Positions 37,390 to 64,000 are shown, counted from the stretch's first letter. The stretch is 64,000 bases of DNA from Schizochytrium sp. TIO01 (GCA_004764695.1 SMSO01000025.1:124001-188000), one strand, 5' to 3'. Notes: generated by a model from the letters alone, not told the origin. Numbers and translations are program-made.

Positions 37390-39165
37390 TTAACTTTGTC
37401 CTTCTTTGGCCTCTGGATATCCGCCCATAGTTTGTTTCCTAAATTTATCGTCGTTGTCATCGTCACCGTTGTCATTGACTCTCTCTTCAATTTGATTTTC
37501 AAGCTCGAGTTTATGTTCAACCTCTAATTTCTTTTGCAAAACTTCTTGCTTTCGTTTTTCAAGTTCTTGTATAATCCGAGCTGCGCGCTCTCGTGATAGC
37601 TCTGCAAGTTCATCCCTCTGCTGGGTGACTGTGCATTCTCCTGAGCGAGAATGCGATTCCTGATCTCCGATTGGTATTTGCATACCACATCCAAGGCGAC
37701 ATGCAACGAGACGTTTAGTGCACACGATCTGAAGGTGGCTTCGCATTTGTGTCTGAGGGATAACCATACCGCACATGTACGGACACTCTCGCAATGTTCG
37801 ATGCGCCATACCAGCCTCGATTTGGCGACGGTACTCAGCCGCACCTGCACATTCATTTAGCTCGTGGCTATCGATATCTCTGGCACGAATTAGACGCCCT
37901 TCAAGACTACAATTAATGTGTGTAAACCTGCAGCGAACTAGTCTATTTCCGCAGTGCTCTTGGACATGCTCATTTAGCTCCTTACGAGTAATCTGCTCAC
38001 CGCACATAAGGGAACATCGGATACGTTCGGGTGCACGATTGCGGGCATGTGAAATTGCAGCAAGGCCTTCTCGACGCACAGAGAAAACGCAGCGCGCCAC
38101 GCGATGCACGGTATACATGAGATCTTGACGTTGATGAGCTTCGAAATCCTTTGCTCGAATTGTACTGCCACAAGCGCACTGTACGAATCGGTTCATACAC
38201 TCTCGCTTAATATGACCTGGCATACAGGCCTCTGGAATTCGTGCACCACATCCCATGGTACAGCGAAAACTTGTGGTAACTTTAGATTGAGCACTACGAA
38301 GTAACTCTGTTTGTTTTCGCCTTCGCGTACAGTCCTTTTCCAGATGTTCGCTCACGTCTTTCCACTTGATTAAGTTGCAACCGCATCGCATAGGGCAGGT
38401 GACCAATCTCTCCGGACACTCCTCTTGCTGATGGATACGAGCTCTGCGTGGCGCCACAACCTTACTGCATGCATGGCACTTAATCCCAGTAGCTTCTTTC
38501 TCGCGATAGAGCAGCGAAAGCTCCCGACGCTTTGCCTCAAGCTTACAGTTATGTTGCAAATGATGCTGCAAGTCACGTAGTTTAATTTGCTCAAGACAAC
38601 CCGTGATAACATTTGGGCATGCTACAGGTTTCTCCAAACATGTCCATAGATGCTTTTCCATGTCACCTTGCACTTGTTCGTGGCAATGCGGACAAAGTAC
38701 AGGCGTGGAATCCGACTTGTGCTGATGCCTTTCTTTCAGTCGAATGTAATTTTGCCGTTGCTTGGTATAGATGCAATCAACCTCTTGATGCCACTCTAAA
38801 TCTTGTTGCTCGACGCGTATGCTACATCCTGGGCGATCACATGCTACGACGCGATGAGGACAATCATTCTCTAGATGACCTCGTAAGCCGTTTAGACCTA
38901 CTCTAACCCCGCAATCTGGACAGATTGTCCATTCGATACTACTTTCGTTGGCCCCTACTCGACACCCCGATGTATGTTGTTGCAAGTTTGTTGAAGCCGT
39001 GCTAGATGCTTCGCTTGCAGCATCAGAGTTGTCCTCAGCAGCCAGGCGTAGCCTTCGGAGTTCCGGTTCTAGGTCTTTTTTGCTTGTTTGGTTGCCTCGT
39101 CGGCGAAAAGACTGCCGCTTTCTCCGCTGACCAGGAAGCCTGGCGCGTTGAAACGTGACAGGCAT
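37390..39165 (-). CDS. TRAF-type zinc-finger repeat protein
   Basis: About a dozen Cx2-4C-x11-12-H-x3-4-C units (e.g. CPDCGVRVGLNGLRGHLENDCPHR, CPYMCGMVIPQTQMRSHLQIVCTKR) and a C-terminal coiled coil. No RING or MATH domain seen. Confidence 0.82.
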   Translation of the reverse strand: MPVTFQRARLPGQRRKRQSFRRRGNQTSKKDLEPELRRLRLAAEDNSDAASEASSTASTNLQQHTSGCRVGANESSIEWTICPDCGVRVGLNGLRGHLENDCPHRVVACDRPGCSIRVEQQDLEWHQEVDCIYTKQRQNYIRLKERHQHKSDSTPVLCPHCHEQVQGDMEKHLWTCLEKPVACPNVITGCLEQIKLRDLQHHLQHNCKLEAKRRELSLLYREKEATGIKCHACSKVVAPRRARIHQQEECPERLVTCPMRCGCNLIKWKDVSEHLEKDCTRRRKQTELLRSAQSKVTTSFRCTMGCGARIPEACMPGHIKRECMNRFVQCACGSTIRAKDFEAHQRQDLMYTVHRVARCVFSVRREGLAAISHARNRAPERIRCSLMCGEQITRKELNEHVQEHCGNRLVRCRFTHINCSLEGRLIRARDIDSHELNECAGAAEYRRQIEAGMAHRTLRECPYMCGMVIPQTQMRSHLQIVCTKRLVACRLGCGMQIPIGDQESHSRSGECTVTQQRDELAELSRERAARIIQELEKRKQEVLQKKLEVEHKLELENQIEERVNDNGDDDNDDKFRKQTMGGYPEAKEGQS

Positions 39166-42539: not shown

Positions 42540-45500
42540 TTATTCTTGTTTCGTGATAGCACTTTTAATCGATTCTCGCAAGGAATCCGGCTTGATTTCT
42601 ATTGTGACGAGCTGCGCAGTAGTCTGGAACTTGCTCCGATAAGTTTCGATGGCTTCGCGAAACTTATCCTGGATCAAATCGTTCAAGTCAAGATTTCCCG
42701 AAACTCTGTGCATTAATAGGAACTCTAGGTCTACCTCTGAGCCCTTTGCCTGGAGCAAGGTGTGCTGATCTTCCAGAGGTATGCTACTGGTTGACAACAA
42801 CATGCCCGTCGCGTAACTAACCCGAAATGACTCCTGCTGGGGTTTGTAAAGTGCCCCTTTGCCAATAGTTTTGATTGAGGTAAGATCCGCAGTCTGAGCC
42901 CGGCCCTTAGCAAGTAGCCACAGCTTGCGCATCAATAGAACCCAACCAACCTGCAAATCGTCTTCATATTTTGCAACGACCTCGGCAACGTCAGGATGCT
43001 TTGCAGGGTCGAGCAAGGGAGCCAAAAACCCACGCCATAATAAGTGCACTTGGCCTGCATTGTTGCCTTTGACAAGCCACTTTGAGAGGCCTACCAGGAG
43101 GTAAGTTAGAGTGCGCTGGCGTAGGCCACGGTCCTTTGCACGGGTCGCACGTAAGGATGCGACATTATCAGGCGCCCATGCCAAAGCTTTGACAAGCTCA
43201 TCCCTTGGAATGAATCGCTGAACAAGCTCCTTGACGTCAATCGGCTCCGTCTCGCACATGAGCAAGGTCCATGCGGCAGCCCGGTAAGGACTATAGTGCC
43301 CATGCGAGTCTGCATCTTTCTCAAAGACACCACTGGTCAAAATGTACTTGGCAAGCTTTAAGGCATCATCCGACAACGAACCTTGCAAAAGGGCTACCAA
43401 GTTTTCACGCCTCACTGCACGCAGCACCGTGGCAGGAGATCTGCACGCAGAAAGAAGCACCACGAACTCGTTGAGCGCAACCACTTCATTCTCCCTCCAT
43501 TCTTTCTCATAAACATCGGTAAAGTTTATGCTGTGCCCACGACGCAAAGCATCAGACATATCCTGCAGCGACTCATAGCTCCCGCCCCAGCTAAAGGTAG
43601 GACACTTGCGGTTTGTCAGGCTTGCACGGTCACTCAGCTGGTGAGGGAAACCCACCTGATCAATAAAAAAGGTTTTGAAGATCGTATCGGGAGGAATGGA
43701 TGCATTCGGCACTCGTTTCTTACTTTCTGCGCGCATCATGCAACACCAAGCTGCAATTTTCATTGCGGGTGATACACCATTTGCGCCGCGCAAATCACGC
43801 TCCACAAAGTCAGGAAAGTCGCGCCCAACGTCATTATCCCAAGTCAAAAGCGCGGCTTGCACCATGGCGCCCGTAACAGTCTTAGCCCTTTTCCCGACTT
43901 CTTCAAACAGCTTGCATGCCAGCGATGCATCTGCCTCAGGAGGATCAAGAGCCCCTATTTGGGGGGGTGGAAGACATTTCTCTGCTATTAGATATGCATC
44001 AACAAATTCCTGCGCTGTCAATGTCGAAAGACGCGGCATCTTTTTGCAAAGGAGCTCCAGAAGCTGCGCCGCTTTGTCCGGGGCCGATAAGGCTTCGTCG
44101 ACGGGATTAAGGATGCGTAGTGAGATTGATTCTCCACCAAAGAGTGCACGGCTTAAATGGAACCAGAGCTTGATAGCTAGAGGTTTCTTCACGTCACCCT
44201 TCCTCTTCTTGATAACCACATTCAATAAACTGACAGGCAGTCTTGCATTCACAGCTTGGGCATTCAGCGGCTCCAAAAGGCTGTCATCACTTGCGTCTTT
44301 ACGATTCGCGATAAGCAAGACATATAAGCGGCTCTGCTGGCCAGCAAGCCAGGCAAAAAGCTCTTGCTTGTGTGCACCAGACAACATGTGGTACTCGTCG
44401 ACCACGAGGAACATGCGTCCGCCTTCTTCCGGAACCTTTCGCGTTAGCACTGAAGCCAATGCTGTGTCTACGAGCTCATCGTCAGAGCCATCAACATACG
44501 CTTTGCCCAACGAAAGCTCCTTGGTTAGCTCCTTGCCAAGCTCATCCGAGAAATGGCTCTTACCAGCGCCAGGCGGAGAGACAAGCAAAACAATTCTCGG
44601 ATCAGGTTGCTTCAGAAGTTCCTTCATGCGTTCTCTGTAGTCATCGTTGCTTCGCGACTCATGTGCTCCGCCTGCTGAAAGCCAGGTTGATTCCTCATTG
44701 ACACCAGGCCCGATCCTTACGCCATCCCTTCTCTGGAGATGGTGCCGGCATACTGTCCTTCAGAAAGTCAATCACCACATTTTCATCCCTGGATTGCATT
44801 CCATCACTATCCCCATGCACTTGCGTACCCGGTAGGAGTGCCGCTTTAAGTGTGGTCTCGAGACTTTTCCAATCTTTGAGTGCCTCGAGGAATGATTTCA
44901 ATGAGATTTCCATCCACGTCGAATTCGTGCACGGGACGATTTGCTCGCAACTGCGCTCGCTGCAGGTCTTTCTTGCATGTCAAAAGCCGCGATGCAGATT
45001 TTGGAGCCCGCGTCAGCACGCACCGATCACGATTTTCCCCAAAGTTCCACGAGGTGTCACAGTCCTCGAGGTAGACAAACCGCCATGGATGATGCTTCGT
45101 GTACTCCGCAATCCACTTGAGCAATTGGTCACTCACTGTCGGTAATCCACGCACCCAGACAAGCCAAGTGAACTCAGAAAAGCACCCAATGATACGTAAG
45201 TACATGGACGCGTCGTCCCGAGCGTTGATAAGGCTATTGTGTCCCAAGTCGCATTCAACTGGAACAATTCCATGCCGGCCAAGAGTCTCCCACTCTTGTC
45301 GTCGAACTACATGAACACCGTACATGTCATTCTTACGTTTGATGAACTTGCGCATCCCAGGCTTGATTGTGTACACACGTGTTAGCTGCTCGCGTACAGC
45401 CTCCTCACGAGGCATCGCGGCTGCAACACAATTTGCGATGGCCAGGAGATTCACGTCCTCGTCTTCATCTACTCCCTCGCTTTTATTAAATGTTACTCCG

Positions 45501-48500
45501 TGACGCGTAAGCGCCGGAGCTACGCACGAGGGAGCACCGTGCTCGAGCGTGGCCATCATAAATCGCTTTGTGCTTACCGGCAATGGACTTCGTGCAAGCT
45601 TGCCAAGCCAATCCAGCAAGCGATCACAATGGTCAGCAGCTTCTGATGGCTCGCGACCATGTAAAGCTCTCGTGAGAAGCCTCTCGTGAAAGATATAGGC
45701 AATCGGAAGTCCATGCGCATCCGAGTACTGTAACTTGAGCTGTCTTGTGTCAAGTGGACAAAAGTAAAGGCAACGACCGGGTTCGCTTCCATGCAAGGTC
45801 CACACGGTGCGGTTGGAGTCCCGCACCTCGCCATATCCACCACTATTGTAGTCAAAAAGATTACTTTCCTTGCCCTCTGTTGTCTCCGCCTCGTCTCCAT
45901 CGTCAGCATCATGGAACTTTCCTGGGCCAGATATTGTCTTGCACGCTTCCTCAACACGCTTACGCGCGACTCCATCGTTTTCGCTCCCGGCCCGCATTTC
46001 TTTGACTGGTTGAAGTCGCAGGCCGGCCGCATCATCCTCGTCATCACTGTCCTCAAATTCCATCGTGAAGACTCTAACGCCGGATGGGGCGTATACACGA
46101 TCAAACTCATCGAGAAGCTGCAGTCCAATGCTGCGAAAGTTGTGCTTAGCAATGTGCGCGTGCATTGCCATGAGCTTGTTTTTCAGAGCGGGGTCGGGTG
46201 AGTATTTCCCGCTCGACAAGTTCAGGTTGTGTTGGACCAATTCTAGTACAAAGTACAGCTGCGAGCGAGCTTCATGGTCAGTTGTAGTCATGATCACGGT
46301 TAGAGCTTTGGACAGCTGAACCTGGATCTCTGGCGAAGCCATTTCGAGTTTCTTGGCAATTCCTGATACGATAGTATGATCCCCAGCCTTTTCACGCACG
46401 TCATTCAGCTGCTGTAGCATCCACGTGACATGCCGCAGCTCGGCCTCCTTATAGCTTGTGTAAGATTGAGCAAGATCTTCAGAAGCAACTTCGTTGGGAT
46501 GGCGAGCAGCTTCCAAATCGACAATATTATTGTCATCCTCATTTTCACCATCTTCTCTATCTTCCTGGCCGTCGTCGTGACTCTCCTCCTCATCATCACT
46601 TTCACTAATTTCGTTTTGCTTCCGAGGAATTAAATCTTCACTGCGTTGAAGAACTTTGATTTTCTTAATCATCTCTTTGACAGAACTTGGGGCTTCCATC
46701 TGTGGCAAGCCAGCAGCAAAAGCAACCTGCACAAGACATTCGAGGACGGCAACTACCTCATCTTGGAAGTTGAAAGCAGCTAGACGATGAGTTTCCACAA
46801 TTGTGTGCAAGAAAAGCTGCGGGCAGTCTCGCTCTTCGCTGCGCGTCGTTGCCATAAGCATCACCCAAGTACCTTGCTGTGTCTTGCGGAGGTAAAACCC
46901 ACGACCTAGAATGGTCGAGTTGTTCGGCAAATCTTGAAAGAGCTCCCAAGTCTCTCCATTATTCGCAAACACGTGGGCAATCCCTGCTTCCGCACCAAGG
47001 TCGCCGTCGAATGAGAATGGGCTGTGACGCACGTAACGCATAGGGTCTTCATCCTCCTGGTCCTCAGGTTTTCGCAATACTGGGTGCAGGCCTGGGGCCA
47101 CTTCCAGCACACCGTACGAAGGTTCGCATTTCACGCGCAAGAGAGTTCGTGCCGAGACCAAGCTCGGTCCTCGGCTTACCGCACCATCAGCTGCCTTCTG
47201 TAGAGAAATTGCAACGTTAAGGGCAAGCTGGTCATCCTCAACATCCTGAGACGACTGTTGTGTTAGGCTTGGGCTCGTCAACACGTCACCTGACTCCTCA
47301 ACTCCTTCATCGAATGTCGCTGACACTTGAGCATCTGTCCGGCCTTCCTCAACCTCTGGTGGGGCTTTATCAGCAGCCAACGGACCATTCCTATATGGAA
47401 GAATCTTTCCTACGAGGCAAATGTCGTATTTGTCATCTAACATGGAGTCCCGATCTTCCCGTGGTGTTTGTGGAAGGTTTGGGAACCTGAGCGCCTTTTC
47501 AAGGCGTGTAATAAAATCTTCACCAACATACGTGCTCACAGTCTCCGTCGTGCTTAGATCCCGCCGCACATCTTTTGATTCGTACTGTTTCACCATAGAG
47601 TTCAGGGCACGCACGTTTTCCCCGAGGAGGTCATCTCCTTCTATTTCCCTTGAACACGTTTCTGCTCATCCAACCAATCTCGTTTTTGCAAGTAGTTGAC
47701 ATGAAAATTGGCTTTGCATCTCCACTCCATTGGAATGAGGCAAATTCAGAAATCATTTGTTTTACTGTCTCACCATCTGTCAGGGGTGTAAGACCTAAAA
47801 CAATATAGAGACCATCGACGATTTCCGGAAGGTGGTCGCGCCCTTTCGATGTGGTATCTAAACCCTCAGCAAACGACTTAAAGGCTATCTCTGACAATGT
47901 TTTCTTTTTGCGAAGTCCAAGGAGAAAGCCGCCAATTGCGCGCAGTTTCTCCCACTCCACATTCTCGGAATGCGCAAAGTACTTGCCGATTTGCATGAAT
48001 AAATCTTTTACAATCGGTATGTAGTCCTCTGAGCTTTTCGCATGATGGGTTCTTTCTGCAAGAATAGTCCCGCTGCTGCCTGCTTTAGATGAAGTTTCAA
48101 ATGTATTGGCAAGCAAAAAGACTTGCTGCATTGTAATTGATTTGGAGAGCTTATCAAAGAGAGAGTCAGCGGTACTACCCATTTCATCCACGAAACGGCC
48201 ATCAAGAACTACTGGGAGTGGGCAATGTACAAAAAACATGTTGGCACGACGTGCATCGTTGCCTAGTTGTTGAACAGTTCTAATTACCTTTTCCAACTTT
48301 TCATCTACACTTCCACGTTTGATTAGGCTAGCCAGATCTTCAGGCTCGACTCCAACCTGGACAAACCATGCCAGCAAAGACATGCCGGTGTGGACTATTG
48401 CTTCAGGCATTTTATACTTCAGCGCAGCCATCGCGATATCCAAGTGAATGAGAAGACGCACATTATGTTCGACAGTACTTACGAAAAACCCCTCCTGAAC

Positions 48501-51500
48501 ACGAGGGAAACCGAGCTTCTTGTTCCACTTCTGGGGAGGATGCAGTGATTTGTCTCTAATTTTGCCGAAGACGTGACTGATGCACTTGGCTGGAAGAAAG
48601 CGATCTGGCTCTACCCGAAGTGCATAGAGTGGGAAATCGTCGCTAAATTGCTGAGCCAACACTAGCGACGTTGATTTGAAAGACGGCCTCGTCTGATTCC
48701 CCTGAAAGCGCGAGATCAAGCTGTTAAGGGACTCCCCTGCGAGTGTATGAGGCATCAGAACAAAGGTAGCGAGCAGCGATAGTGGTTCTGTACCTGAGTT
48801 GCAGGCATCACGGAGAACGTTGTCTCGCACGACGCAGGAGAAGTCGTTCCATTGCTCTGATCCAGTAGGCAGCAGTGCATGAGAGAGATTGTAGGCTGGA
48901 TTCGCTGCCCATGCAAACCATGCAAGCACAAGAAGTGACCTCGAAGGTTCCTTCTGAGTCTGGTTGTCCCAGAATCTCGTTAAAGCTGTGAGTAGTGCTT
49001 CACGTGCCATTTGTGTCGGAAAGAAATGATAGTGGCGCGACTTCATGATCTCTATCTCAATATGAGCTGCATCACTGGCATTGAACTCAACATAGAGTCT
49101 TAACATCACTGGCGATGCAACGAGATCCAGACCAAGCTCAGCCTGCAGCTCCTCAAGCATAAATTTGTTGCGCGCAACAGAAAGCAGTGAGAACTTGTAT
49201 ACGGATGCAGTGATGTCGCTTAGCCAATTTTCGAGAACTTGGGAGATAGAAGTGTCGTTGGAAAGCGTCTCGCTGCGCAGAATTGTGCACGTACGAAGAC
49301 AAACGTTAAAGCGGTCCCAATTTGTGCTCAACCTGGTCTCACTTGATGCGATGGCTTGCACAAGCTCGTGAATGTAGGATATCTGTGCGTCGACCTCACG
49401 GTGAGCAAGAATCGCCTGCAAGACGTGATCGCAAACAAAACGTGGGAAAGGTGCGTCCTTGTCATTATTCGGATGGCTCGCAGCGCCGCGCACAAGAACC
49501 TCAGCCATTGCAGCCGGGGAGAGTTGTTGGTGCCAACCCGAGGTTGAGCGAATGCGTTCAAGCCGTGGAAAGAGGGACATCGCCGTACTCCCTACCGCCC
49601 ACTTGACTAAAGGCTCAAGCCGCAAGAAGAGTACGTCAGCTGCTTGAGCAAGCTTCTCGCGCCATGAAGAGTGTAAGCACAAATTCAGGAGCGCAGCGCC
49701 CATGACGAGGTTCTCGGTGTTTTCCACAACGTGCCGGACAATTCGTTGATCCTTCTCTGACGAGGAAAGGATTACCTCGGCCACCTTCGGTTGTTTCAAA
49801 AGGGCCGTGGAAGGGTCGTCAATTTGCATAAGAATTTCAATGAGGCGCTGCTCAAGATTCCGGTCCTCTCCGTTTCCAGATTTGAAGTCAAAGTGCAGGT
49901 CTGAGCGTAAGAAATCTCGAACGAGACTTGGGAAATCGTCTTTCGTTTTCCCGGTCGAAAGTGCGCTCGGTCGCGCAGCCTGATGCTTAAGAATAGACCA
50001 TGCCAGGGCTGCGATCCTGTGTTGCAGTTCTGCTGCAACACGCGAGGTGGCTTCCTCTTCTCGTGGACCAGTTATAGCTTTCCGCAAAGCATAAAGATCT
50101 TGGCTCAACCGTTGTACAACAAGGTCTGGGAGTGGAAGGGAGGCCATGCGTGTTTTACTAAGTGACAGCGCAAGCAAAAGTCTCGAGGGTGCCTCCTGCA
50201 GCAAATGCAAAAGAATAGGCGTGGAAACCTCAGGAGTTCGCACCCAGCTGCGGTAAACCTCGTTCCAATGCAAATCTCCACCCCGAATAACTGTCTGCTC
50301 GATTATATCCCCCAACGGCGTCATGGAATCCCCACGGCCTGGATCGACATAATAACTCTCTTGACAGGTGGAAATCACGATGTTATCATCTCTGAGCGAG
50401 TTCAGAGTGCTGCACAGGATTTCTCCGGGATTATCTGTGCGACTAATATTGAGTCGTCCCTCTAGAGCACACTTCGGTCTGATTGTTGTTTCCCCCTCCA
50501 AGCATGCAATGAAAGCCCACACGCGCAATGCCTGCGGCGCCAAAAACATGGCCGGGTCATTGGCAACATCAGAAAAGTGCACAATTTTCGTGACGTCTTC
50601 CAGCTCCTCAATGTATGTCCACAAGACACTTGCGACAACATCACCCAATAGTGTTTCTCCACTTTCATTATTGTACGTAAAAGCACTCTCAGGTTTTGTG
50701 TTTGACGCCAATGTCCGTAGCATGCGGTGCAGCAGGGGCACCTGAGACGCAAGTCGTAGAGCAAATTCGCTAAGAAATGGAGGAACGTTGGCGGTGTCCT
50801 CGTCCTCGAGGAACGCCGAGAGCGACTGCACGTGGCTCTTGTCGGAGTTGATGTCAAGGTGAGGCCCAAGAAGAATTCTCAGACCCAGTAAAACGCGATA
50901 GAGTGACTGATTTCTCGAAGGGAGGCGAGTCCGCGCATGGAAAATATCAACATGTTCGAATGTGGTGGTTCCGTCAATTGAAGTTGTTTGAAAAGATGTA
51001 AGGTCGCGCGTTGCAGCGTTGACGACCAGAAGTAAGGGTTTTTGGCACCTTGCACAGTGTGACGCAATAACTTGGAGGCGGTCACGGACCAGTAGCTGTG
51101 CGTGCAAGAGTACGAGAACCATCGGCTCATCTTCGGTATCAGAGACGCCCTGCGACAACAGACCGCGAAGCTTTTCGATACAGCGTGGATCTCTTGCATT
51201 AAGGAAATCAAGCCTCGAGAACTTGTCCAAAAGCGTTGAGGTAAGAGCCTCGGGGTCCTCCGTCACAATGGCGCAGGTGTTTTTGCGCACTGAGCCCGCA
51301 TCGTCATGATACACACGGAGAGAGTCTTGAACATGCTGCGCCCAGTCTGCCGCCTGTGCCGCTTGATGCTGGATTCTGTCTATTGTGCGTGCCGCAAAGA
51401 TCGGGGAGTGGATGAGCTCGCGAGACACGCTGTGCAAGAGTCCATCGTACACCGTGTCGCTCTCGGTCGAGATGACAGGGCTAACCTCCTTGGCACGCTC

Positions 51501-54500: not shown

Positions 54501-54579
54501 TGGACTCGGACTCGGACTCGGACTCGGAGTTCTCTTCGAGCAGCTGCGCTAGCGCAAGCTGGTCCCTGTTCGTTGCCAT
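42540..54579 (-). CDS. Giant (~4,010 aa when joined) P-loop NTPase protein of unknown family, in five ORF pieces separated by four net +1 frameshifts
   Basis: ORFs 54579-53860, 53855-47631, 47614-44846, 44913-44695 and 44627-42540 have overlapping open frames at each junction. Good Kozak context (gccATGG). The last piece has Walker A IVLLVSPPGAGKS and Walker B MFLVVDEYH. Confidence 0.75.
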
Positions 54580-56209
54580 GGCACGCCTCGCGTCGTCTCG
54601 CTTCGCTTTCTGTCAGTTCGGCGCTCGTGCGGCAGAAACGAGATAGCTCGCTGCCACTAGCGCAGCGCAATCGGAGAGGTCCTTCGCCACACGCACTGCC
54701 ACTAGCGCAGCGCAACTGGAGCAGTCTTTCGCCAAACGCAGAGTAGGCACAGCTCAGAGCGAATCAGAGCGAATCGGAGCCACGAAACTCTGGTTGACGT
54801 GATCTTGAGACTCTTCAATTTGGTGCGTGGTGCTGTGATCGCGACGTGTTGGATATGGGGACCTTGCTGATGAGGTTGCAATGCTCGCTTGCGTCCATAC
54901 GAAGATCGTGATGGTCAGGTCGCCTAACACATGAATCGGGCAAGTGATGTGTGCTCTTCTTTTATCAATTTCGATTTGATTTGGTGTTTGTTTCCTTTTA
55001 TGACAGACCTAAAGCAGATACACAGTTTTCATTATTTTTATCATTCTTTATATATTAAAAATAAATAAATAATGTGTATACAGGTCAAGGTTCTCTACAC
55101 GTTTCTTTTCTTTTTTCTTTTTACGTTTTACTGTTTTTGTTTTAAAACTTTAAAAAAGAAAAGATAAAAAGCTTTTAAACTTTGGAGTTCCTCACAAGAG
55201 CTTATAAAAAAAGTCTACCTAAGTAGTGAAAATCATACCTCTACCTATATCTAAGCTTAAAATAAAAACTTCAGACACTTCTTTTAAAGCTTTGGAGCGA
55301 CCTTACAGATGTTATGGTATTTACTAACCCCGAACCAACAGATATACATTTTGTAATTTGTTTTTTAAATTTTTAAATGGATTATAGGTACTATTCAGCA
55401 TACCGTTTTTAACCCACCTTTCTGAATTTCTATTTTAAAACCAAGGACAAAGACTAAGAATATGATTATATTATATTTGAGATTTCAAAAAAGATAAGAA
55501 AAAAGATCGGGTTAGTACCTATATAAGGATAATGCTACTCCTGTCCGCGCTCTCGTATATTATTAAATACCGCTTCGTCTCGTACTAGCTATCTGTTAGA
55601 GTAATAAGTAGCATTTTGCATCCTTTGAAAAGTTAGTTTTGCTTCATTAATTTGCTTCATTAATTTTTAATTTTAATTTAAATCAATTTTGAATCGATTT
55701 ATCTTTGCAAATAAGTAAATAAAATAAACAGAACAGAACCTCCTAATCACTTTTCGGCGCGTGAAATCAAAGTCAAAGCAGATCACCCATGCCCTCAGAG
55801 TTGGATCCATACCAAGGTCAGGTGGAAAGAGACTTCTTCATACTCCTACCAACCAGGTGAGGTCCATCACGACGCCTCGACTTGCGTATGTTTTGATATG
55901 ATCGATCTCATTGATCAATTTGCTTGCGTTGCTTGTTTTGCTCTTATTTGCTTTTATTTGACATTCACCAAAAGTAGAAAAGAGTGGAAGTACATAATTA
56001 TTGACTAAGAGAGCGAATGGAAATGACTCTGATGGAGGATCGCGGCAAAGACTAAACCGCGAGGAGACAGGCGACCTCGACGGTGATGCGACCTGCAGCA
56101 GGTCGTGAAGACGTGCTCGTGAGGGCACGGGGGCGCGTCGTCTCGGCTGTGTTACGTGCGATACACGCAGAGCGCAGGCGGGAAAGACATCAATCAGCTT
56201 AGGAGCACC
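54580..56209. promoter_or_regulatory. Divergent (putative bidirectional promoter) region with AT-rich core
   Basis: Lies between the start codons of two head-to-head genes. AT-rich from about 54960 to 55740, with GC-richer flanks. Confidence 0.5.
54651..54740. repeat. 45-bp imperfect tandem duplication just upstream of the minus-strand giant gene
   Basis: CTGCCACTAGCGCAGCGCAA...TTCGCCA.ACGCA at 54651 and 54696. Confidence 0.85.
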
Positions 56210-59200
56210 ATGGTATGGATCGTCTTCACCAGCCCCGAAGGGCTCGAGGCCGCGGGGGAAGACGGCGTGGCCGTGCAGTTTATGAAAGAGGAACTGGAGG
56301 AAGCCAAGGAGGTTACAGTGTACCGCCGCGAGTCCCTTGTCCGGGGAGAGTCCCTTGTGTTGGTCAAGGTGTCGGTCGCCATATCCAAAGGGATGTTTTC
56401 TGAGGTCTTTGGATCAGTCAAAGGTTTCTTGAAGAATGCTGTGGGTGTCTCTGCGAAAGAGACTATCGAAGTTTCTATAGATACCGGAGCTGAACATCCG
56501 TGTCAACTTCAGATTCCTGCCAAGAGCCTGAGTGCGAAAGAACATGGTTTAATATGTTTTGTGGGTGGTAGCACCCTTGGGGACTATCTTCGATGCGTTT
56601 ATTTCATTGCGACGATCGAGGAGAAGGAACCGTTCAACATTTTCAACAAGTATGAGGGAAATCTAGAAAGGGAACATGCAAAGGTATCTGAGGTCTTGGC
56701 TTCGTACGGCAAGTGGGAAACTAGCTTGCCATGGGATCTCACCACTCCCGAGGACCATTTCCGTGCATCAAAGGCCCTTTCGAAAATAGAATGGAATTCT
56801 GCTGCTCAAACTCATCTAGATTCCCTTGTCAGAAGTTTGAGTCAAAAACAGTATATAGATAGAAATTTGGAGCGTCTAAGCCGCGGGGCACCATGGTGGC
56901 TGATGCGCAACACGATTTTGGCCGCCTTGTTTAAGGATATTTTTAGTGTTCCAGTTCTTGATGACGAGAACCGAGTCGCGCCTGATTCACACGAAGCTGT
57001 CTTAGAGGAGGCTATTGAAGTCGCATGCTCAATTGGTGCTCTTGCAATGAGCCATACGTGGTCTCCTCAACGCTACTTAACCGGCAATATCGTTTATGGA
57101 GCATTGCTCTGCATTACGCTGCCGACTATAGAAATTCTGCCGGACCTGCCAGACCTAAATGATCAGCAAATTCAACTTGCCAGGAAATTAGAAGTAAAAA
57201 TTGCGATTCGTTCAGAGCCTGCACAACAAAGGTTTCTCTCATGGATACGGCGGGCGGTGGTCATATCGGTGCCACTTAACCTTGCAATTGACAACTGTTT
57301 GGAATTCTTTAATGGCGACGTAGACGATCTTATTGCTAAGCGTGTAGAATTCCGTATGCAAAAATGGCGAGAAAAGGAATACAATTTTGAGCTCCTTGAA
57401 GGGTTCGTTGTGAATGAGATCCCGCCTTCACTGAAGCTAAAAATTGCGCTTCTCATGTTTCGATTGGCTTCAGATAAAGGTGACGCATATCATCTCCTTT
57501 GCATTGTGATAAATCCCCTTTGTGCCAGTTCTAGTCCCCCTTTACATGTAACCCGAAAAAAAGCAATACAAATGCTGGCGCAAAATGAGGCAACTGTATT
57601 TCTTGACGCCTTGTCGAAGCTTTCTTTGCAGTCCAAACAACGCATGGCGAAAAAAGTTAATTGGAAAGAGGCTGTAGATTCTTTTACAAAGTTGAGCACA
57701 TCCACCCTTCCACTTCTTCTATCCTTTGGGCAGGTACGCCAATGCATAGAGAACGAGGACTACATTCGCTTTGTTTGTACTGTGATGTTTAATTGTCCCC
57801 ATAAGGCAAAGGAGGCGGAAGTGCTTTCTCTCCTCCGACCAAACGAACAAAGGCAACTCAGAGACCTTTTCAAGGATATTCATCTCCTGATTGATATCTG
57901 CAGTGCGTTGAGCAAATTACCAGCTAACGAACGTCCTGAACGAGCACTCTCGGTCTTTGCGGGTGCATTCAAAAACCAAACGCGTTCCTTGAGCCAAGTG
58001 TCGGGGTGGTGCGCGGATTGGTGTGATGACCGCACTGCCTCAAAAGTAAATGTTCACATTCTTATCACAGAGCATTTCAACCAGAGTAGCCTTCAGCAAG
58101 GAGCTAAGCTTGCCCAGGATGGCATAACGATGCTGCAAGAGCGAGGCGAGCGTATGAAAGCCCTCCAATCGTATGTAAACTCAAATTTACGAGGGCATAT
58201 TAGTGAAGAAATTCGAGAAGACCTTTCCGAGCACCTGAAGTTGTATTCAGACAAGATAATGGAATTCCCTAGCGAAGACGCTGGGGTACACCAGCTTGAG
58301 AAGCTCAAGGCTTTCCAACGCCATGAAGGAGCAATTGCCGCAGACTCGGTATGGTTTCATCATGCAGCTGCCCACCTCGCTTCACAGTCTGGAGACGGAT
58401 TGCGCAATGTTGAAGATCTATTTGAGCTAGTTGGAAACGCTCTTGCCAAGGCACACGCAGATGTTCTCGAAGCTTTGAATGGACAGAGTATGTGCACGGT
58501 GCTAGATCTTATATTAAAGACTACCATCGAAAGAGAAGAAAACGCGCTCCGTGCGATACTTGCATCAAATCCTGATACTAAGGACGATGAAAACGTCAAA
58601 AACGTCAAGCGCCTAGCGCGTCTCTCGGTGGCTACAATTCCTATACTTGCAGACGTTCGCAAAACACCATCACGCCTTCACAAACTCATCGCAAAATTCC
58701 TCGAAAATCTGGATAGCTCCGCTCCATCTGGATCATGGATGCAGAAATATGGGGACGAGGGTCAGGCTCTTCAGTGGTTTGGGGAAAAAAGCCTCGATAC
58801 CTTCGTGCAGGATGGCGAAATGGTATTACAAACTCTTCCTGTTGAAGAGTGGCCTAAACTTATGCATGTAGAAGCCGAGAGCGCAGGGATACAGGCACTC
58901 CTTAGTATTCGCTTAACGGATGGAAAAGAAACCCTTGATCAGATGCTTGAACAGCTGCGCTCAGCGACACTGGTCCAAGACCCGCGACTAACACCTAGCG
59001 CGCGCCTTCTTTCAGAGATTTGCCATCGTTTAGATGGATTAAGCCCCCGGGGCAAGCCCAAGGATGCTGTAAAGGAAATTGTCAGCCTCGCTCGACTCTT
59101 GGCACAGTCCAAAGTGCGGGATTCATCTGTTTTGGGGCTTGTTAGTCTACTGAAACTAGGAGATTCTAAGCCGGAGACTTTGCTTAACCAGAATCTCCAG

Positions 59201-62200
59201 GCTCTTCAGGATGCCCAACTCGAATTACGTGTCGCTCGTCCAGGTAACGCCCTCCATAAAAATGAGTTGTGCAATGCTCCACACCACACGCATGGCGTCT
59301 GTGTGCAGGTGATTGCTGCCAAGGGGATGGAGTTTCGAATGATGGGCCATGGGCTCTCCTTGCATGAGTTAGGATGCATGGAACTCCCTGATATGGTATC
59401 ACAACTCCTTATTTACACCGGTAGCTCTGGGTCCAAGTTTAACGCAGCAAGAATCGCTCTCTTTATATCCCGTGTGCAACGTGCACGCGAACTAGGCGAC
59501 CGCTTGCACCATGCCATGCGCATTAACTTTGGTTTCCAGGGTACGAAGGAGGAATGGGGTGAGGTTATTGTCAAGAATACTGGCACTCTTCGAATTGTCT
59601 GGCGATATGCTATTCCCCAAACAGTTAGTGCTGAAACGGACGTTGACGATGCTCAAGAGACGCTTCTTCCGAGCACTATCCTTGCTGAGAAGATGCGAAT
59701 TAGGCGAACCTTGGAGGCCAGTGTCCCTTGGATCCTTCGTCTACGCCGTCGGAGCGTTGCCTGGAACGAAGCCGTGGCCTTGGAGGCTGTTCTGGCGGAT
59801 CCAGACTCAGCACGGGCGGCTCTTCGAGACCTTCACGCATTGAGAGCCCAGCACGACGAAGACGTATCAAGAGCACTGCGACTAGTGAACCAAGCCTTAC
59901 AGCACAAGTCCGTTGTAAGCAGGGAAAGCGAGCCGGTACAAGTCCAACCACGGTCTCTTGCGCCTGTAATTTTATTTGAATGGGACAACAAGTTAGCCAA
60001 AGCAAGTGCAGCGCAAGGAGGCATAAGTCTCGCTCATTGGGCTACGAGAGCAATGAATCTCATTGGTGCTGGATCGGCGACTACCTTCATCGCAATTGAT
60101 GAGTCATTTTCAGATCTCACTCTCGATGCGCTGCTGGTGGGTCTTCGTGAAGCTACCAAGACGCCAGATCGTGCAGGGTATTGTCTTGCGAATGCCAATG
60201 GGTTAGTAATTGTCGGTCTTGATTTGCTGCCTCTCAGAAAACAACTCACAGTCTACGAGGCGTGCGCACATTATGCTCGAGCAGTTAGGAAGGTTGAAGG
60301 GAAAATCCCAGTTCCGGTGCTTGTCCTTTTAACCAGTAGGTCCATAAACCTAGACGAAGAAACCACTCGAGCAATCTATCGTGTGGTGCCTGGATCTGCG
60401 GATGGAATTTTTGCAACTCTATGCGAGCAGGGTAGGCTATCACAAAAACTACGCGTCCAACGTATTAAGGAAAAATCACTTGTGTTTCGTGCTGCGGGCA
60501 TCGTAACAAGTGGGAAGCGTGTGTTGCTTCGCAAAGGCATGACAATCGCAGAACTTACTTCCGAGCTACGAGATGCCTCGAAGAATGCAGCGACAAGCTT
60601 ACGATCGGCTAAAATGCTAGTTTTAGACTGCTACGAGGATGCTTTCGAGATCTTTGAGTCTGCTCTTGGCGTCGCCTTGGTTGGGCTGTTCAATGCTCGC
60701 GTCGTTGGCGCCGAGTCTCAAAGTCGACCCTTGGTGTTCTCCCAGAAAGGTGATGTGGAGCTGATATTAGAGATTCCTGATGAATTAAATCTGCCGTTTA
60801 ATGCACGTAAGCTCAAAGATCGGTCGGATAAGTGGGTATCAATTTGCTGCGCCTGCACAACAGTCTGAGGCTACAGAGCAGGCTGCGGCTCGGCTCGAAG
60901 AGCTGGCGGAGCAAGCCATTCAACGTCACATCGACGAGTCTGATGTTCATGAAGCCCTGTGTTGCGTACCGCGGAGAGGTCAGCAGAGGCTCCCGTTTGT
61001 GTACACCTCGGCATCATTAAAGGCGATGGCAAAGGCAGTTCGGTCAATTCCCTTCTAGACCCGGAAGAGAAAATGAAATGGGTCACGCGGTAGTTCTGGC
61101 GGGCGATACAGGTACGGGAAAGACCTATTTGTGCATGAAACTTCATGAGCTCTTGGTGAGCTCAAAACTCTGGCGTGTTAATGATCTTCTCCGTATTTGG
61201 TCGTTTTCAGCGGCTTTTGGTCATCGTGAGGTGCAAGCCTTGAATGCAATGATCTGCGAGGATGCGCGAACTGAACATCAAAGGAAAACGAAGAGAATCT
61301 GGAACTTTGCAATTTTGGACGAGGTGACGGCAAGTCCCGCGCAGAGTTCCATTGAGCAGCTTGTCCGCATGCAAGGTCACAATGATCGTACACAAACCGA
61401 TCGCGTTGAGCGGGAAGATATTACCTCGTGTCCCTTGTTTCTCGTAACGTGCAATCCTGACCCTCTTCGTGACGAGGTTTTCCCACTTGCAAAAACTATG
61501 CGATCGGTTCAAATCAGTCTCGAGCGTCCTCCGTTAGATTCCATGGCCTCTTTTGTGCGGGCCAACTTTGCACGATTTGCGTCCAGAGTCGATGCTGACG
61601 TTGCGACCAGAATTTACCTTATCGTTGCCAAGGCCTTTGAAAGTCAAAGTAGAAGGAATAAAACTGAGTATGGTGTTTTGAGTGCACGTGATGCAGCTCA
61701 ATGCGCGGCCATTGCTGGTGCCCTAGACAGCAGTCAAGAGTGTCTTCAAGCAATTGCACCAGGAAGTTCATCAGTGCATGCTCTGATTCTTGCTATCTAC
61801 CTTGTGATGGGAATCCGCATGGTTCCTCGCAATGATTTCTACACAAGTTTGGAGCAGGAAGAAACTATATTTGAGACAGAAAGATCGTGGAGTAGTTGGT
61901 TTGATGGTGTACGAGACTGTATTACAAAGGCCTATGAAGTTCCTTCGACTATCGTCCCGACTCTCGCTTTCAAGGAAAACCTGTTGGTGCTCACCTTGGG
62001 TATGTTAACCAGGCAACCAGTTCTCCTCCTTGGTAACGACGGGATGTCCAAAAGTCTCTCAATTAAACTGACCATGCGACAGATGCGAGGCAGCCTCTCT
62101 GCAAAGGGCCTTCTTAGAGATCATTTCCCACGAGTGCAGTCTTTTGCTTTGCAATTTTCCCCTAGGACCTCCGCAGGTCTGGTTCGCCAACTTGGAAACG

Positions 62201-64000
62201 CCCTTGTGGCGTTGAATAGCGAAGGAGATTCTTCCTTAGGAGAAGTTCTGCCGTGCGCCGTGATGGAGGAGATGTCGATGGCACGTACGGGTCCTGATGG
62301 CCCACTGCGGGCTTTACATGGATTGTTAGATGATCACCAGACGCGTGTGGGCCGTGATCGAAGCAGTACAGCAGGCTCGGGTTCTAATACTTTCGGGTTT
62401 TGCGCCACATCTAACTTTCTGCCGAGTATGCAAGGGAAAATTCCAGTGGGCCGTGCGCTAGCCAATCGCATTCTCGTTCTTGTTCACGAAAAGCAGACAG
62501 ATGATGATTTGATGAAGATGGCCAATGCTGCGGCCAAGGGTTGGACTAAGCATCCGCTGCAAGTCACAGGGGAGCAACTTATCAAGCGCGCAGTCGGTCA
62601 TGTAGCCGTCCGTGATCTGCTTATATTTGCACGAGCCACAGCGCAGGCAGGTATGACTGCGACTGCGCCTGACACTGGCGCTGTCACTTGCGCTGCTTTC
62701 TTACAGCGACGGTCGAAAGCAGATTCTGAGAAGACATGGAAAGCGATGAAAATGTATCAAAATAAGGACCAAGATGACAATCCTCGGCTTTTTCGCGACA
62801 ATGTTCTTCGAATTTTCCGCGACCCCGGGATGCCATCTCGAGGTCTTTTGATTGTATACGATGATGTGAGAGATCTGAGCGACTGGCTCCACGAATTGGA
62901 CGAGCGTCTTTGCGCAAGGCTGTGCTATTGTGAAGCTTATGTGCTAGACCTTTTGTGTCTTAACCTTCCGACGAGGGCGATTGAGCTGACAGGAGCTACC
63001 AAGGTGAGTGAACTTGCGCGCTTGACCGAGTCTGATGTAATTCAGCTCTGCATGACTGGCAATTGCGGAGATGAGGCTCCCAAATTAGCACGCAATTTGC
63101 GACAATGTCTTGAAAAATATGCTCAGTTGTGTGGCGATCCTTCTCCCCTTGTCCTACGCACAAAGCTTGCAAAAGGTCTGAATGCTGAACAAGATGTTGG
63201 AGATTGGGTCGATACGGTGTTCACCTCATTTGGGAGCTTAAGACGCGAGAGGATTCGCACGGCCTTGGGGAAGCGGAATATTCGCACACCAGGTGATCTT
63301 GCAGATATGTCGGTCGCCGATTTTTTGATTCCAACATGGCGCGAAGAAGCTTTTACATGTCTCACGCTTAAAACAGCACGTTGTGCGCTTTCGGGCGGCA
63401 AGATCCCTGTAGACGTTCGTGACGAGCTCAAATGTCACAACAAAGTTCTTAGGATAGCGCTTGAAGCGGCACCTGAGGGCCCTTCGAAAGCAATGAAGAT
63501 ATTGAAGGCTTCAACAGAGAGACAACGCGAAATTATCTGCGTGAGTAGTTGGGCGCGAAGTGCAGATGATGCAAGTCAAGAAGCGCTGCTGCGGTTGCGA
63601 ACAAGCATTCAAAGTGGTGGGACAGCGGTTCTCGTGAATCCAGAGCCAATTTTAGATTGCATTCATGCGCTCTTGAATGACTTTACTGATGGGGAAACAT
63701 CAACACTGCAGATGGGCACCTCTTTTGAAACGGTGTCGATTGGTCCTGGTGCCCGCCTCATCTTGTGTATGCACTCCAAGCAAATTCAAAATGTTCATGA
63801 TGCCGTGCTCTCACGCGTCTCGGTGGTGAATTCTGGGTATCCAATCCCAAGACAGATACCGAGTACCACGTTACGTCCTACGTCTGTCTATGCTCAGCTC
63901 GCAGCTCGAGTGCGGAACGCGGGTACGAATTGGCCTAGAGAAGAGGATCGGCACCTTCTTAAAAGTCTTGACGACACAAGTGGAGTATTGAGTGAGCGTC
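56210..64000 (+). CDS. RNF213/mysterin-like giant multi-AAA+ ATPase, 3'-partial, with two net +1 frameshifts (~60835 and ~61040)
   Basis: ATG in strong Kozak context at 56210. After the shifts the frame is open from 61021 to the window end. Motifs in RNF213 order: VVLAGDTGTGKT (Walker A at 61102), AILDE, LVTCNP, VLSARD, FKENLL..RQPVLLLGNDGMSKSL, FSPRTS, AVMEE..PLRALHGLLD, FCATSN, ANRIL, SRGLLIV, GGTAVLVNPEPILDCIHALLN. Confidence 0.78.

What the first reader, a model, noticed from the sequence alone, without database searches (positions are those of the whole stretch)
42540..64000. Head-to-head pair of giant NTPase genes: an RNF213-like AAA+ protein and an unrecognised ~4,000-aa P-loop protein (candidate paired innate-immune system)
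Seen: two very large, apparently intronless genes diverge from a 1.63-kb shared region, both with P-loop modules and both much more divergent than the housekeeping neighbours. Established: animal RNF213 is a giant AAA+/E3 cell-autonomous immunity factor, and head-to-head sensor/helper NTPase pairs are known for plant NLRs. Inference: this may be a co-regulated two-component defence locus in a protist, for example against large DNA viruses or intracellular bacteria. I know of no description of such a pairing.
Basis: partly seen in the sequence, partly recalled or inferred. Interest (0 to 1): 0.88.

Follow-up and report, generated by a model that had tools for sequence, protein, structure and literature searches.

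The report
Paired giant RNF213-like and AAA+ genes
A marine protist (a thraustochytrid) carries two back-to-back, expressed 12-kb genes, one a RING-less relative of the animal immune ubiquitin ligase RNF213 and the other a member of a large, undescribed family of giant ATPases; the pair was copied as a unit within this genome, but I found no such pairing in other organisms, so a joint defence role remains a hypothesis.

Summary
Two intronless genes diverge from a 1,630-bp ATG-to-ATG spacer: a minus-strand gene (54579 to 42540, about 4,011 aa) and a plus-strand gene (from 56210, ending 4.5 kb beyond the window, about 4,095 aa). The ORF breaks are six single-base insertions in this assembly, not introns. 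Contigs that behave as transcript assemblies, from three studies, cover both genes end to end and leave about 1.05 kb of AT-rich spacer uncovered.

The plus gene is a real RNF213 homologue. It has AAA3- and AAA4-like modules and an RZ finger that keeps the catalytic Cys and His, but it has no RING.

The minus gene belongs to a pan-eukaryotic, unnamed family of giant proteins (at least 308 clusters). It has one live AAA+ module, two degenerate ones and a helical tail; some relatives end in a VWA domain.

The genome has exactly two copies of each family. Both copies sit head-to-head, at loci with unrelated flanks, and the duplication predates the split from Hondaea. The pairing is not general, however. 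About 14 informative loci among 80 metagenomic RNF213-like loci show no divergent giant partner. In Bodo saltans the minus family forms arrays of its own paralogues, and Monosiga has two copies with consecutive locus numbers.

Functional coupling or an immune role is plausible but unshown. Three other first-stage notes of this scan cover parts of this same stretch. I found no paper on the pairing or on the minus family.

The parts
42540..54579 (-). Minus-strand giant gene, about 4,011 aa, intronless. It belongs to an undescribed pan-eukaryotic family of giant AAA+ proteins.
   Evidence: Open pieces. The database model P0002 is 98-100% identical and collinear. A 12.76-kb contig that behaves as a transcript covers the gene. 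A profile search found 308 related clusters.
44295..44579 (-). Core of the live AAA+ module: Walker A SPPGAGKS (44556-44579), Walker B FLVVDEYHML (44382-44411), sensor 1 LLIANRKD (44295-44318).
   Evidence: Motifs located. The AlphaFold2 model has pLDDT 86. Foldseek matches RFC, ORC and FtsH at E 1.5e-5. VIA gives Z 14.3 to RFC and 13.6 to p97. The relative P0004 passes the Pfam AAA cut-off.
42543..43900 (-). Conserved all-helical C-terminal domain that follows the AAA+ lid.
   Evidence: The model shows helices from about residue 280 to 729 at high pLDDT. Invariant Trp, Pro and Asn columns run across 37 family members. No specific structural match was obtained.
45002..45361 (-). Degenerate AAA+ alpha/beta core without a P-loop. 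It contains the family's most conserved block, PWRFVYLEDCDTSWNFGENRDRC (45020-45088).
   Evidence: Model residues 762-881 match dynein AAA (Z 8.2), Rubisco activase (Z 7.5) and RFC (Z 7.0-7.1).
46865..47164 (-). Conserved beta-rich domain of unknown affinity, running from SLVSARTLLRVK to GFYLRKTQQGTW.
   Evidence: The model has pLDDT about 90 for residues 157-270 of this piece. The block is conserved in P0004 and 20 other relatives. No fold match was found for it, and it was not folded on its own.
50990..51350 (-). Dead N-terminal copy of the AAA+ module. The P-loop position reads AIVTEDPEAL, the Walker B position MVLVLLHAQLL and the sensor position LLLVVNAATRDL.
   Evidence: A profile-profile comparison of the live module against residues 850-1450 gives probability 82%, E 1e-5, over 155 columns.
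54580..56209 (.). Shared 1,630-bp spacer. It comprises the GC-rich 5' UTR of the minus gene (54580 to about 54955-55003), an uncovered AT-rich core (about 55004-56039, GC 0.22-0.36) and the 5' UTR of the plus gene (about 56040-56209).
   Evidence: Contig ends in three RNA-like runs, against full coverage in a DNA run. There is no sequence conservation with the 2,555-bp spacer of the paralogous pair.
56210..64000 (+). Plus-strand RNF213-like gene, about 4,095 aa, intronless. It runs on to its stop at extended coordinate 68497-68499 (G000:C24:192497-192499).
   Evidence: Open pieces. Model P0005. 12.83-kb contigs that behave as transcripts start at 56040-56060. PDB hits are to RNF213 only.
61102..61335 (+). 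First competent AAA module (AAA3-like): Walker A GDTGTGKT (61102-61125) and Walker B AILDEV (within 61309-61335).
   Evidence: The position is collinear with RNF213, about 310 aa upstream of the AAA4-like P-loop. Weak Pfam hits to AAA_16 and AAA_5.
62032..62283 (+). Second AAA module (AAA4-like): P-loop GNDGMSKS (62032-62055), aligned with RNF213 GKPGSSKS. The Walker B position reads AVMEEM (Glu-Glu instead of Asp-Glu; within 62254-62283).
   Evidence: phmmer against PDB RNF213 gives E 2e-8 over 156 aa. BLASTP against Spea RNF213 gives 3e-11. The C31 paralogue also has EE.
53871..53871 (.). One of six +1 single-base insertions that break the frames in this assembly. The others are at about 47645, 44895, 44729, 60830 and 61050.
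   Evidence: This base is 'left out' in the contigs of all four runs laid. The other five are inferred from the frame offsets against P0002 and P0005.

Best explanation
These are two real, intact and expressed giant genes that share a divergent promoter region.

The plus gene encodes a RING-less homologue of RNF213. It has a dynein-type AAA core with two nucleotide-binding modules equivalent to RNF213 AAA3 and AAA4. It also has an RZ finger that keeps the catalytic cysteine and histidine. By analogy with RNF213 it most likely works as an ATP-gated transthiolating E3 ubiquitin ligase.

The minus gene encodes a member of an ancient, unnamed family of 3,000-4,900-aa proteins. These are built from one live classical AAA+ module, two degenerate AAA-like modules, a beta-rich domain and a conserved helical tail. 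In some lineages a C-terminal VWA domain is added.

The two genes were duplicated together as a two-gene block before this lineage split from Hondaea. They are still the only copies of both families in the genome. This makes them a lineage-specific linked module that is probably co-regulated.

Shown here: the anatomy, the homology, transcription, and the duplication of the pair as a unit. Inferred: E3 activity, co-regulation, and any functional coupling. A role in cell-autonomous defence or surveillance rests only on analogy with animal RNF213 and on the way the minus family expands in tandem arrays.
For: Gene structure and integrity.

Transcription: in three RNA-like runs from different studies, contigs end at 54955-55003 and begin at 56040-56060. 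Nothing lies between these points, while a DNA run covers the whole stretch.

RNF213 homology: PDB hits are to RNF213 only, at E 2e-8. The RZ finger PF20173 scores 28.6 bits here and 50-58 bits in the paralogue. BLASTP aligns CPSC..GNCG..CPGCG..GGEFH with the RNF213 RZ finger, keeping the residues reported as nucleophile and general base (PMC11549300, read). The family profile hits vertebrate RNF213 at 1e-69.

Minus family: 308 clusters, 82 of them at E<=1e-30. Members occur in choanoflagellates, kinetoplastids, dinoflagellates, Syndiniales, a metamonad and thraustochytrids. VWA domains are present in 4 of 12 giants. Folds. Internal duplication.

Linkage: the C31 locus has uninterrupted 3,948-aa and 4,139-aa ORFs head-to-head. 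Homology between the two loci is confined to the two genes. The genome holds exactly two RZ fingers and two minus-type genes. Hondaea P0003 is 76% identical to the window copy, against 47% for the C31 copy.
Against: One duplication event can carry both genes and their orientation by descent, so 2 of 2 paired is a single observation and not two.

Minus-family HMMs found no partner in any of 80 metagenomic RNF213-like loci. The roughly 14 loci with 5-10 kb of upstream DNA show same-strand ORFs there and no divergent giant.

In Bodo saltans, three to five minus-type genes fill one 42-kb contig. In Monosiga, two minus-type genes have consecutive locus numbers on one scaffold. In these organisms the family's neighbours are its own paralogues.

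The two spacers share no conserved sequence.

The six frame breaks could in principle be real decay in the assembled strain, since 24 kb of the C31 paralogues have none.

The six-unit AAA ring of the plus protein was not modelled. Its AAA4-like Walker B reads EE rather than DE.
Confidence: 0.6

Rival explanations
1. The two genes are chance neighbours. They are unrelated giant genes that happen to sit head-to-head, and a single old segmental duplication copied both. They act in different processes and are not functionally coupled.
For: Divergent orientation is common among neighbouring genes (general knowledge). The pairing is absent from the metagenomic RNF213-like loci I could examine and from the Bodo and Monosiga loci. 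The two paralogous spacers share no motif. The two families are not homologous.
Against: Both members of both pairs have stayed intact and adjacent since before the Hondaea split, while every flanking gene differs. No unpaired copy of either family exists in the 64-Mb genome. The two transcripts start about 1.05 kb apart and have similar contig depths in three runs.
Confidence: 0.3
2. This is a two-component defence system. One giant ATPase senses or scaffolds, and the RNF213-like ligase marks an intruder (a virus factory, a bacterium or a damaged compartment) with ubiquitin.
For: Animal RNF213 is a cell-autonomous immune E3 whose AAA and RZ activities drive the coating of pathogens (PMC11549300; PMC7311170). 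The plus gene keeps those two activities' motifs. The minus family has a patchy distribution and lineage-specific tandem expansions, as immune receptor families often do. The plus paralogues have diverged faster than the minus ones (35% against 49% identity). Between strains, the N-terminal arm of the plus gene carries 12 nonsynonymous and about 6 synonymous differences. A related thraustochytrid hosts mirusvirus-like elements (bioRxiv 10.1101/2023.06.15.545109).
Against: There are no data on infection or induction. No recognisable sensor domain (LRR, TPR, WD40, CBM20) was found in either protein. The pairing was not seen outside this lineage. Neither family was found on viral contigs. The SNP count is tiny and may include assembly errors.
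Confidence: 0.15
3. This locus is decaying. In the assembled strain both genes are pseudogenes, broken by six frameshifts.
For: There are six frame breaks in 24 kb here and none in the 24 kb of the C31 paralogues. The breaks lie in very short base runs, which are not classic long-read error sites.
Against: All six are +1 insertions, a one-sided pattern that fits a technical artefact better than mutation. The insertion at 53871 is missing from four runs representing at least two haplotypes. Full-length uninterrupted models exist for both genes. Apart from the breaks there are no stops or larger lesions.
Confidence: 0.07

Closest known systems
RNF213 (mysterin), the vertebrate giant AAA+/E3 ubiquitin ligase of cell-autonomous immunity
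   Same: It is a giant single-chain protein. Two nucleotide-binding AAA modules lie in the same order and spacing as RNF213 AAA3 and AAA4, including the unusual GxxGxSKS P-loop of AAA4. A C-terminal RZ finger has the nucleophile Cys and the His in place. The matches along the chain are collinear.
   Different: No RING domain was detected. The protein is about 1,100 aa shorter, and no CBM20 or N-arm similarity was found. The zinc site reads CxxC where RNF213 has Cys...His. The Walker B of the AAA4-like module is Glu-Glu. It comes from a heterotrophic stramenopile, not an animal. It has a fixed divergent partner gene, which is not reported for RNF213.
ZNFX1, the other protein family with an RZ finger
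   Same: It shares the RZ-type zinc finger (PF20173).
   Different: ZNFX1 is an SF1 helicase with NFX1-type fingers. The plus protein has a dynein/RNF213-type AAA core, and its only solved-structure sequence matches are RNF213.
Midasin (Rea1) and VWA8: giant or large AAA+ proteins that end in a VWA/MIDAS domain
   Same: Some relatives of the minus protein combine AAA+ modules, a long helical region and a C-terminal VWA domain.
   Different: Midasin has six tandem dynein-type AAA modules near its N-terminus. The minus family has one live classical-type module near the C-terminus plus two dead ones. The window protein itself has no VWA. There is no sequence match to midasin in the PDB profile search.
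Head-to-head sensor/helper NLR pairs of plants (such as RGA4/RGA5 and RRS1/RPS4)
   Same: Two large P-loop NTPase genes are transcribed divergently from a short shared spacer, and the pair is duplicated as a unit.
   Different: The two proteins here are not homologous to each other. Neither passes a NACHT or NB-ARC model. No integrated decoy or repeat sensor domain was seen. Conservation of the pairing across species was not found.

Membership tests
RNF213 family | An AAA module homologous to RNF213 AAA4, with the GxxGxSKS P-loop | tested here: met
   phmmer against PDB gives E 2e-8 over 156 aa, and the significant hits (E at most 1e-6) are all RNF213 chains. BLASTP against Spea RNF213 gives 3e-11. 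GNDGMSKS aligns to GKPGSSKS.
RNF213 family | A second competent module (AAA3) upstream, with canonical Walker A and B | tested here: met
   GDTGTGKT and ILDEV lie about 310 aa upstream of the AAA4-like P-loop. The spacing is similar to human RNF213. The relative P0006 has GETGCGKT at the same position. The pairwise alignment of this module to RNF213 itself was not significant.
RNF213 family | A six-unit dynein-like AAA ring in one chain | not tested
The only extra evidence is a weak collinear BLASTP segment downstream of AAA4 (E 0.058).
RNF213 family | An RZ finger with the catalytic Cys and His | tested here: met
   PF20173 scores 27.8-28.6 bits (cut-off 27) in the window gene and 50-58 bits in the paralogue. 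The alignment to the RNF213 RZ finger keeps the Cys of GxCG and the His of GGxxH. The roles of these residues are from PMC11549300.
RNF213 family | A RING domain in the E3 module | tested here: not met
   No RING-type Pfam family was found at E<=0.1 in P0005 or in the C-terminal 3,333 aa of the paralogue. In the 3'-ward 2,492-aa open piece, which should hold any RING, the only CxxC...CxxC cluster is the RZ finger.
AAA+ superfamily (minus protein) | Walker A, Walker B and sensor 1 on an alpha/beta core followed by a helical lid | tested here: met
   The model has pLDDT 86. VIA gives RFC Z 14.3 with 185 aligned residues, and Foldseek gives E 1.5e-5. The relative P0004 passes the Pfam AAA cut-off; the window protein itself scores 17.5 bits, below the cut-off of 21.2.
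Midasin / VWA8 type (minus protein) | Six tandem dynein-type AAA modules and a C-terminal MIDAS/VWA domain | tested here: not met
   There is one live and two degenerate modules, far apart. The window protein has no VWA. VWA occurs only in some relatives.
STAND / NLR NTPases (either protein) | A NACHT or NB-ARC type NTPase with a winged-helix/helical arm and a repeat sensor | tested here: inconclusive
   NACHT and nSTAND hits lie below the Pfam cut-offs. Avs5 STAND structures tie with RFC, p97 and ORC (Z 12.4-13.0). Atlas hints at nSTAND score under 0.8, which is noise level. No repeat sensor domain was found.
Paired (two-gene) immune modules | Adjacency of the two families conserved across independent genomes | tested here: not met
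   Adjacency is conserved only between the two loci of this genome. It is absent from the metagenomic RNF213-like loci and from the Bodo and Monosiga loci.

The most novel reading that the evidence does not exclude
The minus-strand protein represents an ancient, unstudied family of giant eukaryotic ATPases that behaves like an immune-receptor family, with a patchy distribution and tandem expansions in Bodo and Monosiga. In thraustochytrids it has been wired to an RZ-finger ligase of the RNF213 type as a co-duplicating, co-transcribed two-gene defence module, for example against mirusvirus-like or intracellular invaders. That would place RNF213-type immunity, with a dedicated partner, far outside animals.
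Probability: 0.15. Interest if true: 0.85.

Novelty: new variant of a known kind. Interest (0 to 1): 0.55.

Why it matters
RNF213 is one of the least understood giant enzymes of animal innate immunity. A RING-less version that keeps the AAA core and the catalytic RZ finger, in a protist for which transformation methods are reported (my own knowledge, not checked here), would offer a simpler system for asking what the AAA-plus-RZ machine does on its own.

Apart from that, the search uncovered a family of at least 308 clusters of 3,000-4,900-aa AAA+ proteins that spans several eukaryotic supergroups. I found no name or paper for it. It forms tandem arrays in at least one free-living protist, Bodo saltans.

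If the linkage seen here reflects function, it gives the first handle on that family and a candidate partner for an RNF213-type ligase. If it does not, the locus is still a clean example of two 12-kb intronless genes sharing a divergent promoter.

Tried and rejected
- Introns as the cause of the frame changes: rejected. All junctions are single-base offsets against collinear models, and no joints appear in the laid contigs.
- Homology between the two giants: rejected by BLASTP and by profile-profile comparison.
- Midasin or dynein identity for the plus gene: not supported. All significant solved-structure hits are RNF213.
- Profile of the minus family against PDB sequences: only P-loop noise, E about 0.7.
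- ESM Atlas look-ups of the C-terminal 1,199 aa of the paralogue and of the N-terminal 1,860 aa of the window protein: scores 0.78-0.86, generic AAA or STAND hints. I treat these as uninformative.
- Foldseek on the 918-aa middle piece: nothing below E 0.3. Only the wide structural search exposed the degenerate AAA core.
- Viral contigs: no relative of either family.
- Conserved promoter motifs between the two paralogous spacers: none beyond a T-rich 19-mer.
- Synteny with Hondaea through the Rab-like 2A tail of model P0003: no Rab-like gene lies near the window gene, so that model is a chimera or the flank differs.
- Proteomics supplements of PMC12221091: no RNF213-like entry by name.
- Literature searches for the pairing or the minus family: nothing found.
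- The first profile job failed on a size limit and was repeated.
- No complex prediction was sent, because I do not claim that the proteins bind.


Full report
**Observation**

The window is G000:C24:124001-188000 of a 64-Mb, 37-contig eukaryotic genome. Earlier notes of this scan call it Aurantiochytrium-like. The best named relative of the minus gene is from Hondaea fermentalgiana, so I treat the organism as a thraustochytrid without naming a species.

On the minus strand, four open stretches of 250, 2083, 939 and 739 aa run from 54612 down to 42543. On the plus strand, an open stretch of 1581 aa (56123-60865) is followed by one that leaves the window. I fetched the next 30 kb. The second plus-strand stretch ends at extended coordinate 68496 and is 2,492 aa long.

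**The frame breaks are not introns**

A database protein of 4,011 aa (P0002, from assemblies of public runs) is 98-100% identical to the minus gene and collinear with it. A protein of 4,095 aa (P0005) matches the plus gene at over 99%. Mapping them back shows that every change of frame is a one-base offset: at about 53871, 47645, 44895 and 44729 in the minus gene, and at about 60830 and 61050 in the plus gene. All six are +1 insertions in this assembly.

Laying contigs of four public runs on 53701-59700 showed the base at 53871 'left out' in all four, and no splice-like joints. I read the breaks as assembly artefacts. One thing stays unexplained: the 24 kb of the paralogous genes on contig C31 have no break at all. 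The remaining five sites should be checked with reads of the assembled strain.

**Transcription**

Three runs from three studies are labelled as RNA by guess only; the tool flags one of them, X15, as probably DNA. All three have contigs that end at 54955-55003 and others that begin at 56040-56060. They have no coverage in between, while a DNA run covers the whole stretch. Their contig lengths (12,758 and 12,830 in one run, 12,845 in another) equal the lengths of the two genes plus short UTRs.

Both genes are therefore transcribed as unspliced mRNAs of about 12.8 kb, from start regions about 1.05 kb apart. An AT-rich core (GC 0.22-0.36) lies between them. Contig depths are similar for the two genes in each run (52 and 39; 10 and 11; 36 and 22). 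Contig depth is a poor measure of expression, and I use it only as 'both present'.

**The plus gene**

Sequence search of all solved structures returns RNF213 chains as the only significant hits (E 2e-8 to 9e-7). They align 156 residues around the P-loop GNDGMSKS to the GKPGSSKS module of RNF213. By position this is AAA4, one of the two catalytically competent units described for mouse RNF213 (PMC7311170). About 310 residues upstream lie a canonical Walker A (GDTGTGKT) and Walker B (ILDEV), in the place of AAA3.

Beyond the window's end, at extended coordinates 66442-66543, Pfam finds an RZ-type zinc finger just above its cut-off. The C31 paralogue scores 50-58 bits for the same model. BLASTP against a frog RNF213 aligns CPSCKFLYSIGNCG...CPGCG...GGEFH to the RNF213 RZ finger. 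This keeps the cysteine and histidine that PMC11549300 assigns as nucleophile and general base. The zinc ligand that is His in RNF213 is Cys here.

No RING family is detected at E<=0.1 in either paralogue. The Walker B of the AAA4-like module is Glu-Glu in both paralogues. A profile of the family, which included a closer RNF213-like protein (P0006), retrieves vertebrate RNF213 at 1e-69.

I file the gene as a divergent, RING-less member of the RNF213 family. The six-unit ring was not modelled.

**The minus gene**

Pfam gives only sub-threshold AAA hits. A profile of its C-terminal 1,000 residues, searched against 1.84 billion cluster representatives, found 308 clusters at E<=0.001 and 82 at E<=1e-30. 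Many are 3,100-4,861 aa long, with the match at the same relative position.

Named members come from these organisms:
- Monosiga brevicollis, Barroeca, Salpingoeca and Codosiga (choanoflagellates)
- Bodo saltans (kinetoplastid, at least ten genes)
- Symbiodinium species and Amoebophrya
- Kipferlia bialata (metamonad)
- Hondaea

All are 'hypothetical' or 'AAA+ ATPase domain-containing'; the Symbiodinium ones carry the automatic label PAT23. Four of twelve full-length members end in a VWA domain. The window protein does not.

An AlphaFold2 model of the last 729 residues (pLDDT 86, pTM 0.77) shows a complete AAA+ module followed by a long helical domain. Structural neighbours are clamp loaders, p97, Pex1/6, ORC/Cdc6, FtsH and bacterial Avs5, all tied (Foldseek E 1.5e-5; VIA Z 12-14). 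No AAA+ clade can be assigned.

A model of the preceding 918 residues is only partly confident (pLDDT 64). It contains two confident parts: a beta-rich domain, and an alpha/beta core that matches AAA domains of dynein, Rubisco activase and RFC (Z 7-8) but lacks a P-loop. That core carries the family's most conserved block.

A profile-profile comparison also supports a third, dead copy of the module at residues about 1077-1241 (probability 82%, E 1e-5). This is what another first-stage note on this stretch had proposed.

The two giant families are not homologous to each other.

**Linkage**

Searching the whole genome gives exactly one further copy of each gene. Both are on contig C31: a 3,948-aa ORF on the minus strand (6979193-6991036) and a 4,139-aa ORF on the plus strand (6993565-7005981). 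They lie head-to-head, with 2,555 bp between their start codons.

A six-frame comparison of 94 kb around the window with 60 kb around that locus finds similarity only inside the two genes. The annotated flanks differ: a TRAF-type zinc-finger protein and an Arc1p-like protein here, a cathepsin there. The genome holds only these two RZ fingers and, even when queried with a distant family member, only these two minus-type genes.

The minus paralogues are 48.7% identical and the plus paralogues 35.1%. The Hondaea protein is 76% identical to the window copy, so the duplication is older than that split.

**Outside this genome**

A metagenome scan with the AAA4 region returned 231 confirmed RNF213-like places, of which 80 loci were kept. 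HMMs of the minus family hit none of them in six frames. Most contigs hold little more than the gene. In the roughly 14 with 5-10 kb of upstream DNA, the upstream ORFs lie on the same strand, and there is no divergent giant ORF.

In the other direction, record numbers and contig lengths show three full and two partial minus-type genes on one 42,272-bp Bodo saltans contig, and two on another contig. Two more have consecutive locus numbers on one Monosiga scaffold. The pairing is therefore not a general property of either family. Tandem self-arrays are a feature of the minus family.

**Reading**

The anatomy is solid.

For function, I commit to the plus protein being an ATP-regulated, RZ-dependent ubiquitin ligase, by homology with RNF213. 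The minus protein I read as a large AAA+ scaffold or remodeller with a single active site.

The case that the two act together rests on four points: co-duplication, exclusive co-occurrence in this genome, long retention, and a shared start region. All four trace back to one duplication event. I put about 0.3 on mere neighbourhood and about 0.15 on a true two-component defence module. The remainder of the linked-module reading stays agnostic about the process.

Weak hints in the defence direction are the faster divergence of the plus paralogues, 12 nonsynonymous against about 6 synonymous strain differences in the plus N-terminal arm, the expansion pattern of the minus family, and the presence of mirusvirus-like elements in a related thraustochytrid.

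**Novelty**

I found no paper that mentions RNF213 in stramenopiles, a partner gene of RNF213, or the minus family. The RNF213-like gene is a new, RING-less variant of a known kind. The minus family seems undescribed but is visible in public databases. The pairing is new but so far lineage-specific.

Noticed in passing
window 37390-39165 (-): A 591-aa ORF with four TRAF-type zinc fingers (PF02176, E 3e-29) lies two genes downstream of the minus giant. TRAF-type fingers are signalling adaptors in animal immunity, so its nearness to an RNF213-like gene may or may not be meaningful.
   Followed up: no
window 53871, 47645, 44895, 44729, 60830, 61050, against G000:C31:6979193-7005981: There are six +1 single-base insertions in 24 kb of the window pair and none in 24 kb of the paralogous pair in the same assembly. 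This unevenness is unexplained. Possible causes are local assembly quality, a haplotype mixture or real decay.
   Followed up: partly
P0003 (Hondaea fermentalgiana, 'Rab-like protein 2A', 3432 aa): This public gene model is a chimera. It is the orthologue of the minus giant with internal pieces missing, fused at its C-terminus to a Rab-like GTPase. The name given by the source is misleading.
   Followed up: partly
Bodo saltans records CUG93875.1-CUG93880.1 (42,272-bp contig) and CUG90391.1/CUG90392.1; Monosiga MONBRDRAFT_38957/38958: The minus-type giant AAA+ family forms tandem arrays of 3,000-4,000-aa genes in Bodo saltans, and Monosiga has two copies with consecutive locus numbers on one scaffold. 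Bodo has at least ten copies.
   Followed up: partly
L023-L102 (for example L039, L053, L089; GC 0.18-0.22): RNF213-like AAA4 modules are common in metagenomes (231 confirmed places). Many of the loci kept have very low GC and uninterrupted ORFs of 2,300-4,450 aa. The contig name series suggest that they come from a few sample sets, which I did not trace, so the source organisms were not identified. RING-less RNF213 relatives may be widespread in protists.
   Followed up: no
window about 54650-54745 (5' UTR of the minus gene): A unit of about 45 nt containing TGCCACTAGCGCAGCGCAA occurs twice in tandem in the GC-rich 5' UTR. The RNA-like runs also carry a 6-nt in-frame insertion at 54501, in the Ser/Glu-rich N-terminus.
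   Followed up: no
window 56210-59700: Between strains, the N-terminal arm of the RNF213-like gene has 12 nonsynonymous and about 6 synonymous differences. The first 236 codons of the minus gene have none. The sample is small and some differences may be assembly errors.
   Followed up: partly
extended coordinates 69676-72540 (L006): The next plus-strand ORF after the RNF213-like gene is 955 aa long and has no Pfam family. It has no counterpart at the C31 locus.
   Followed up: no
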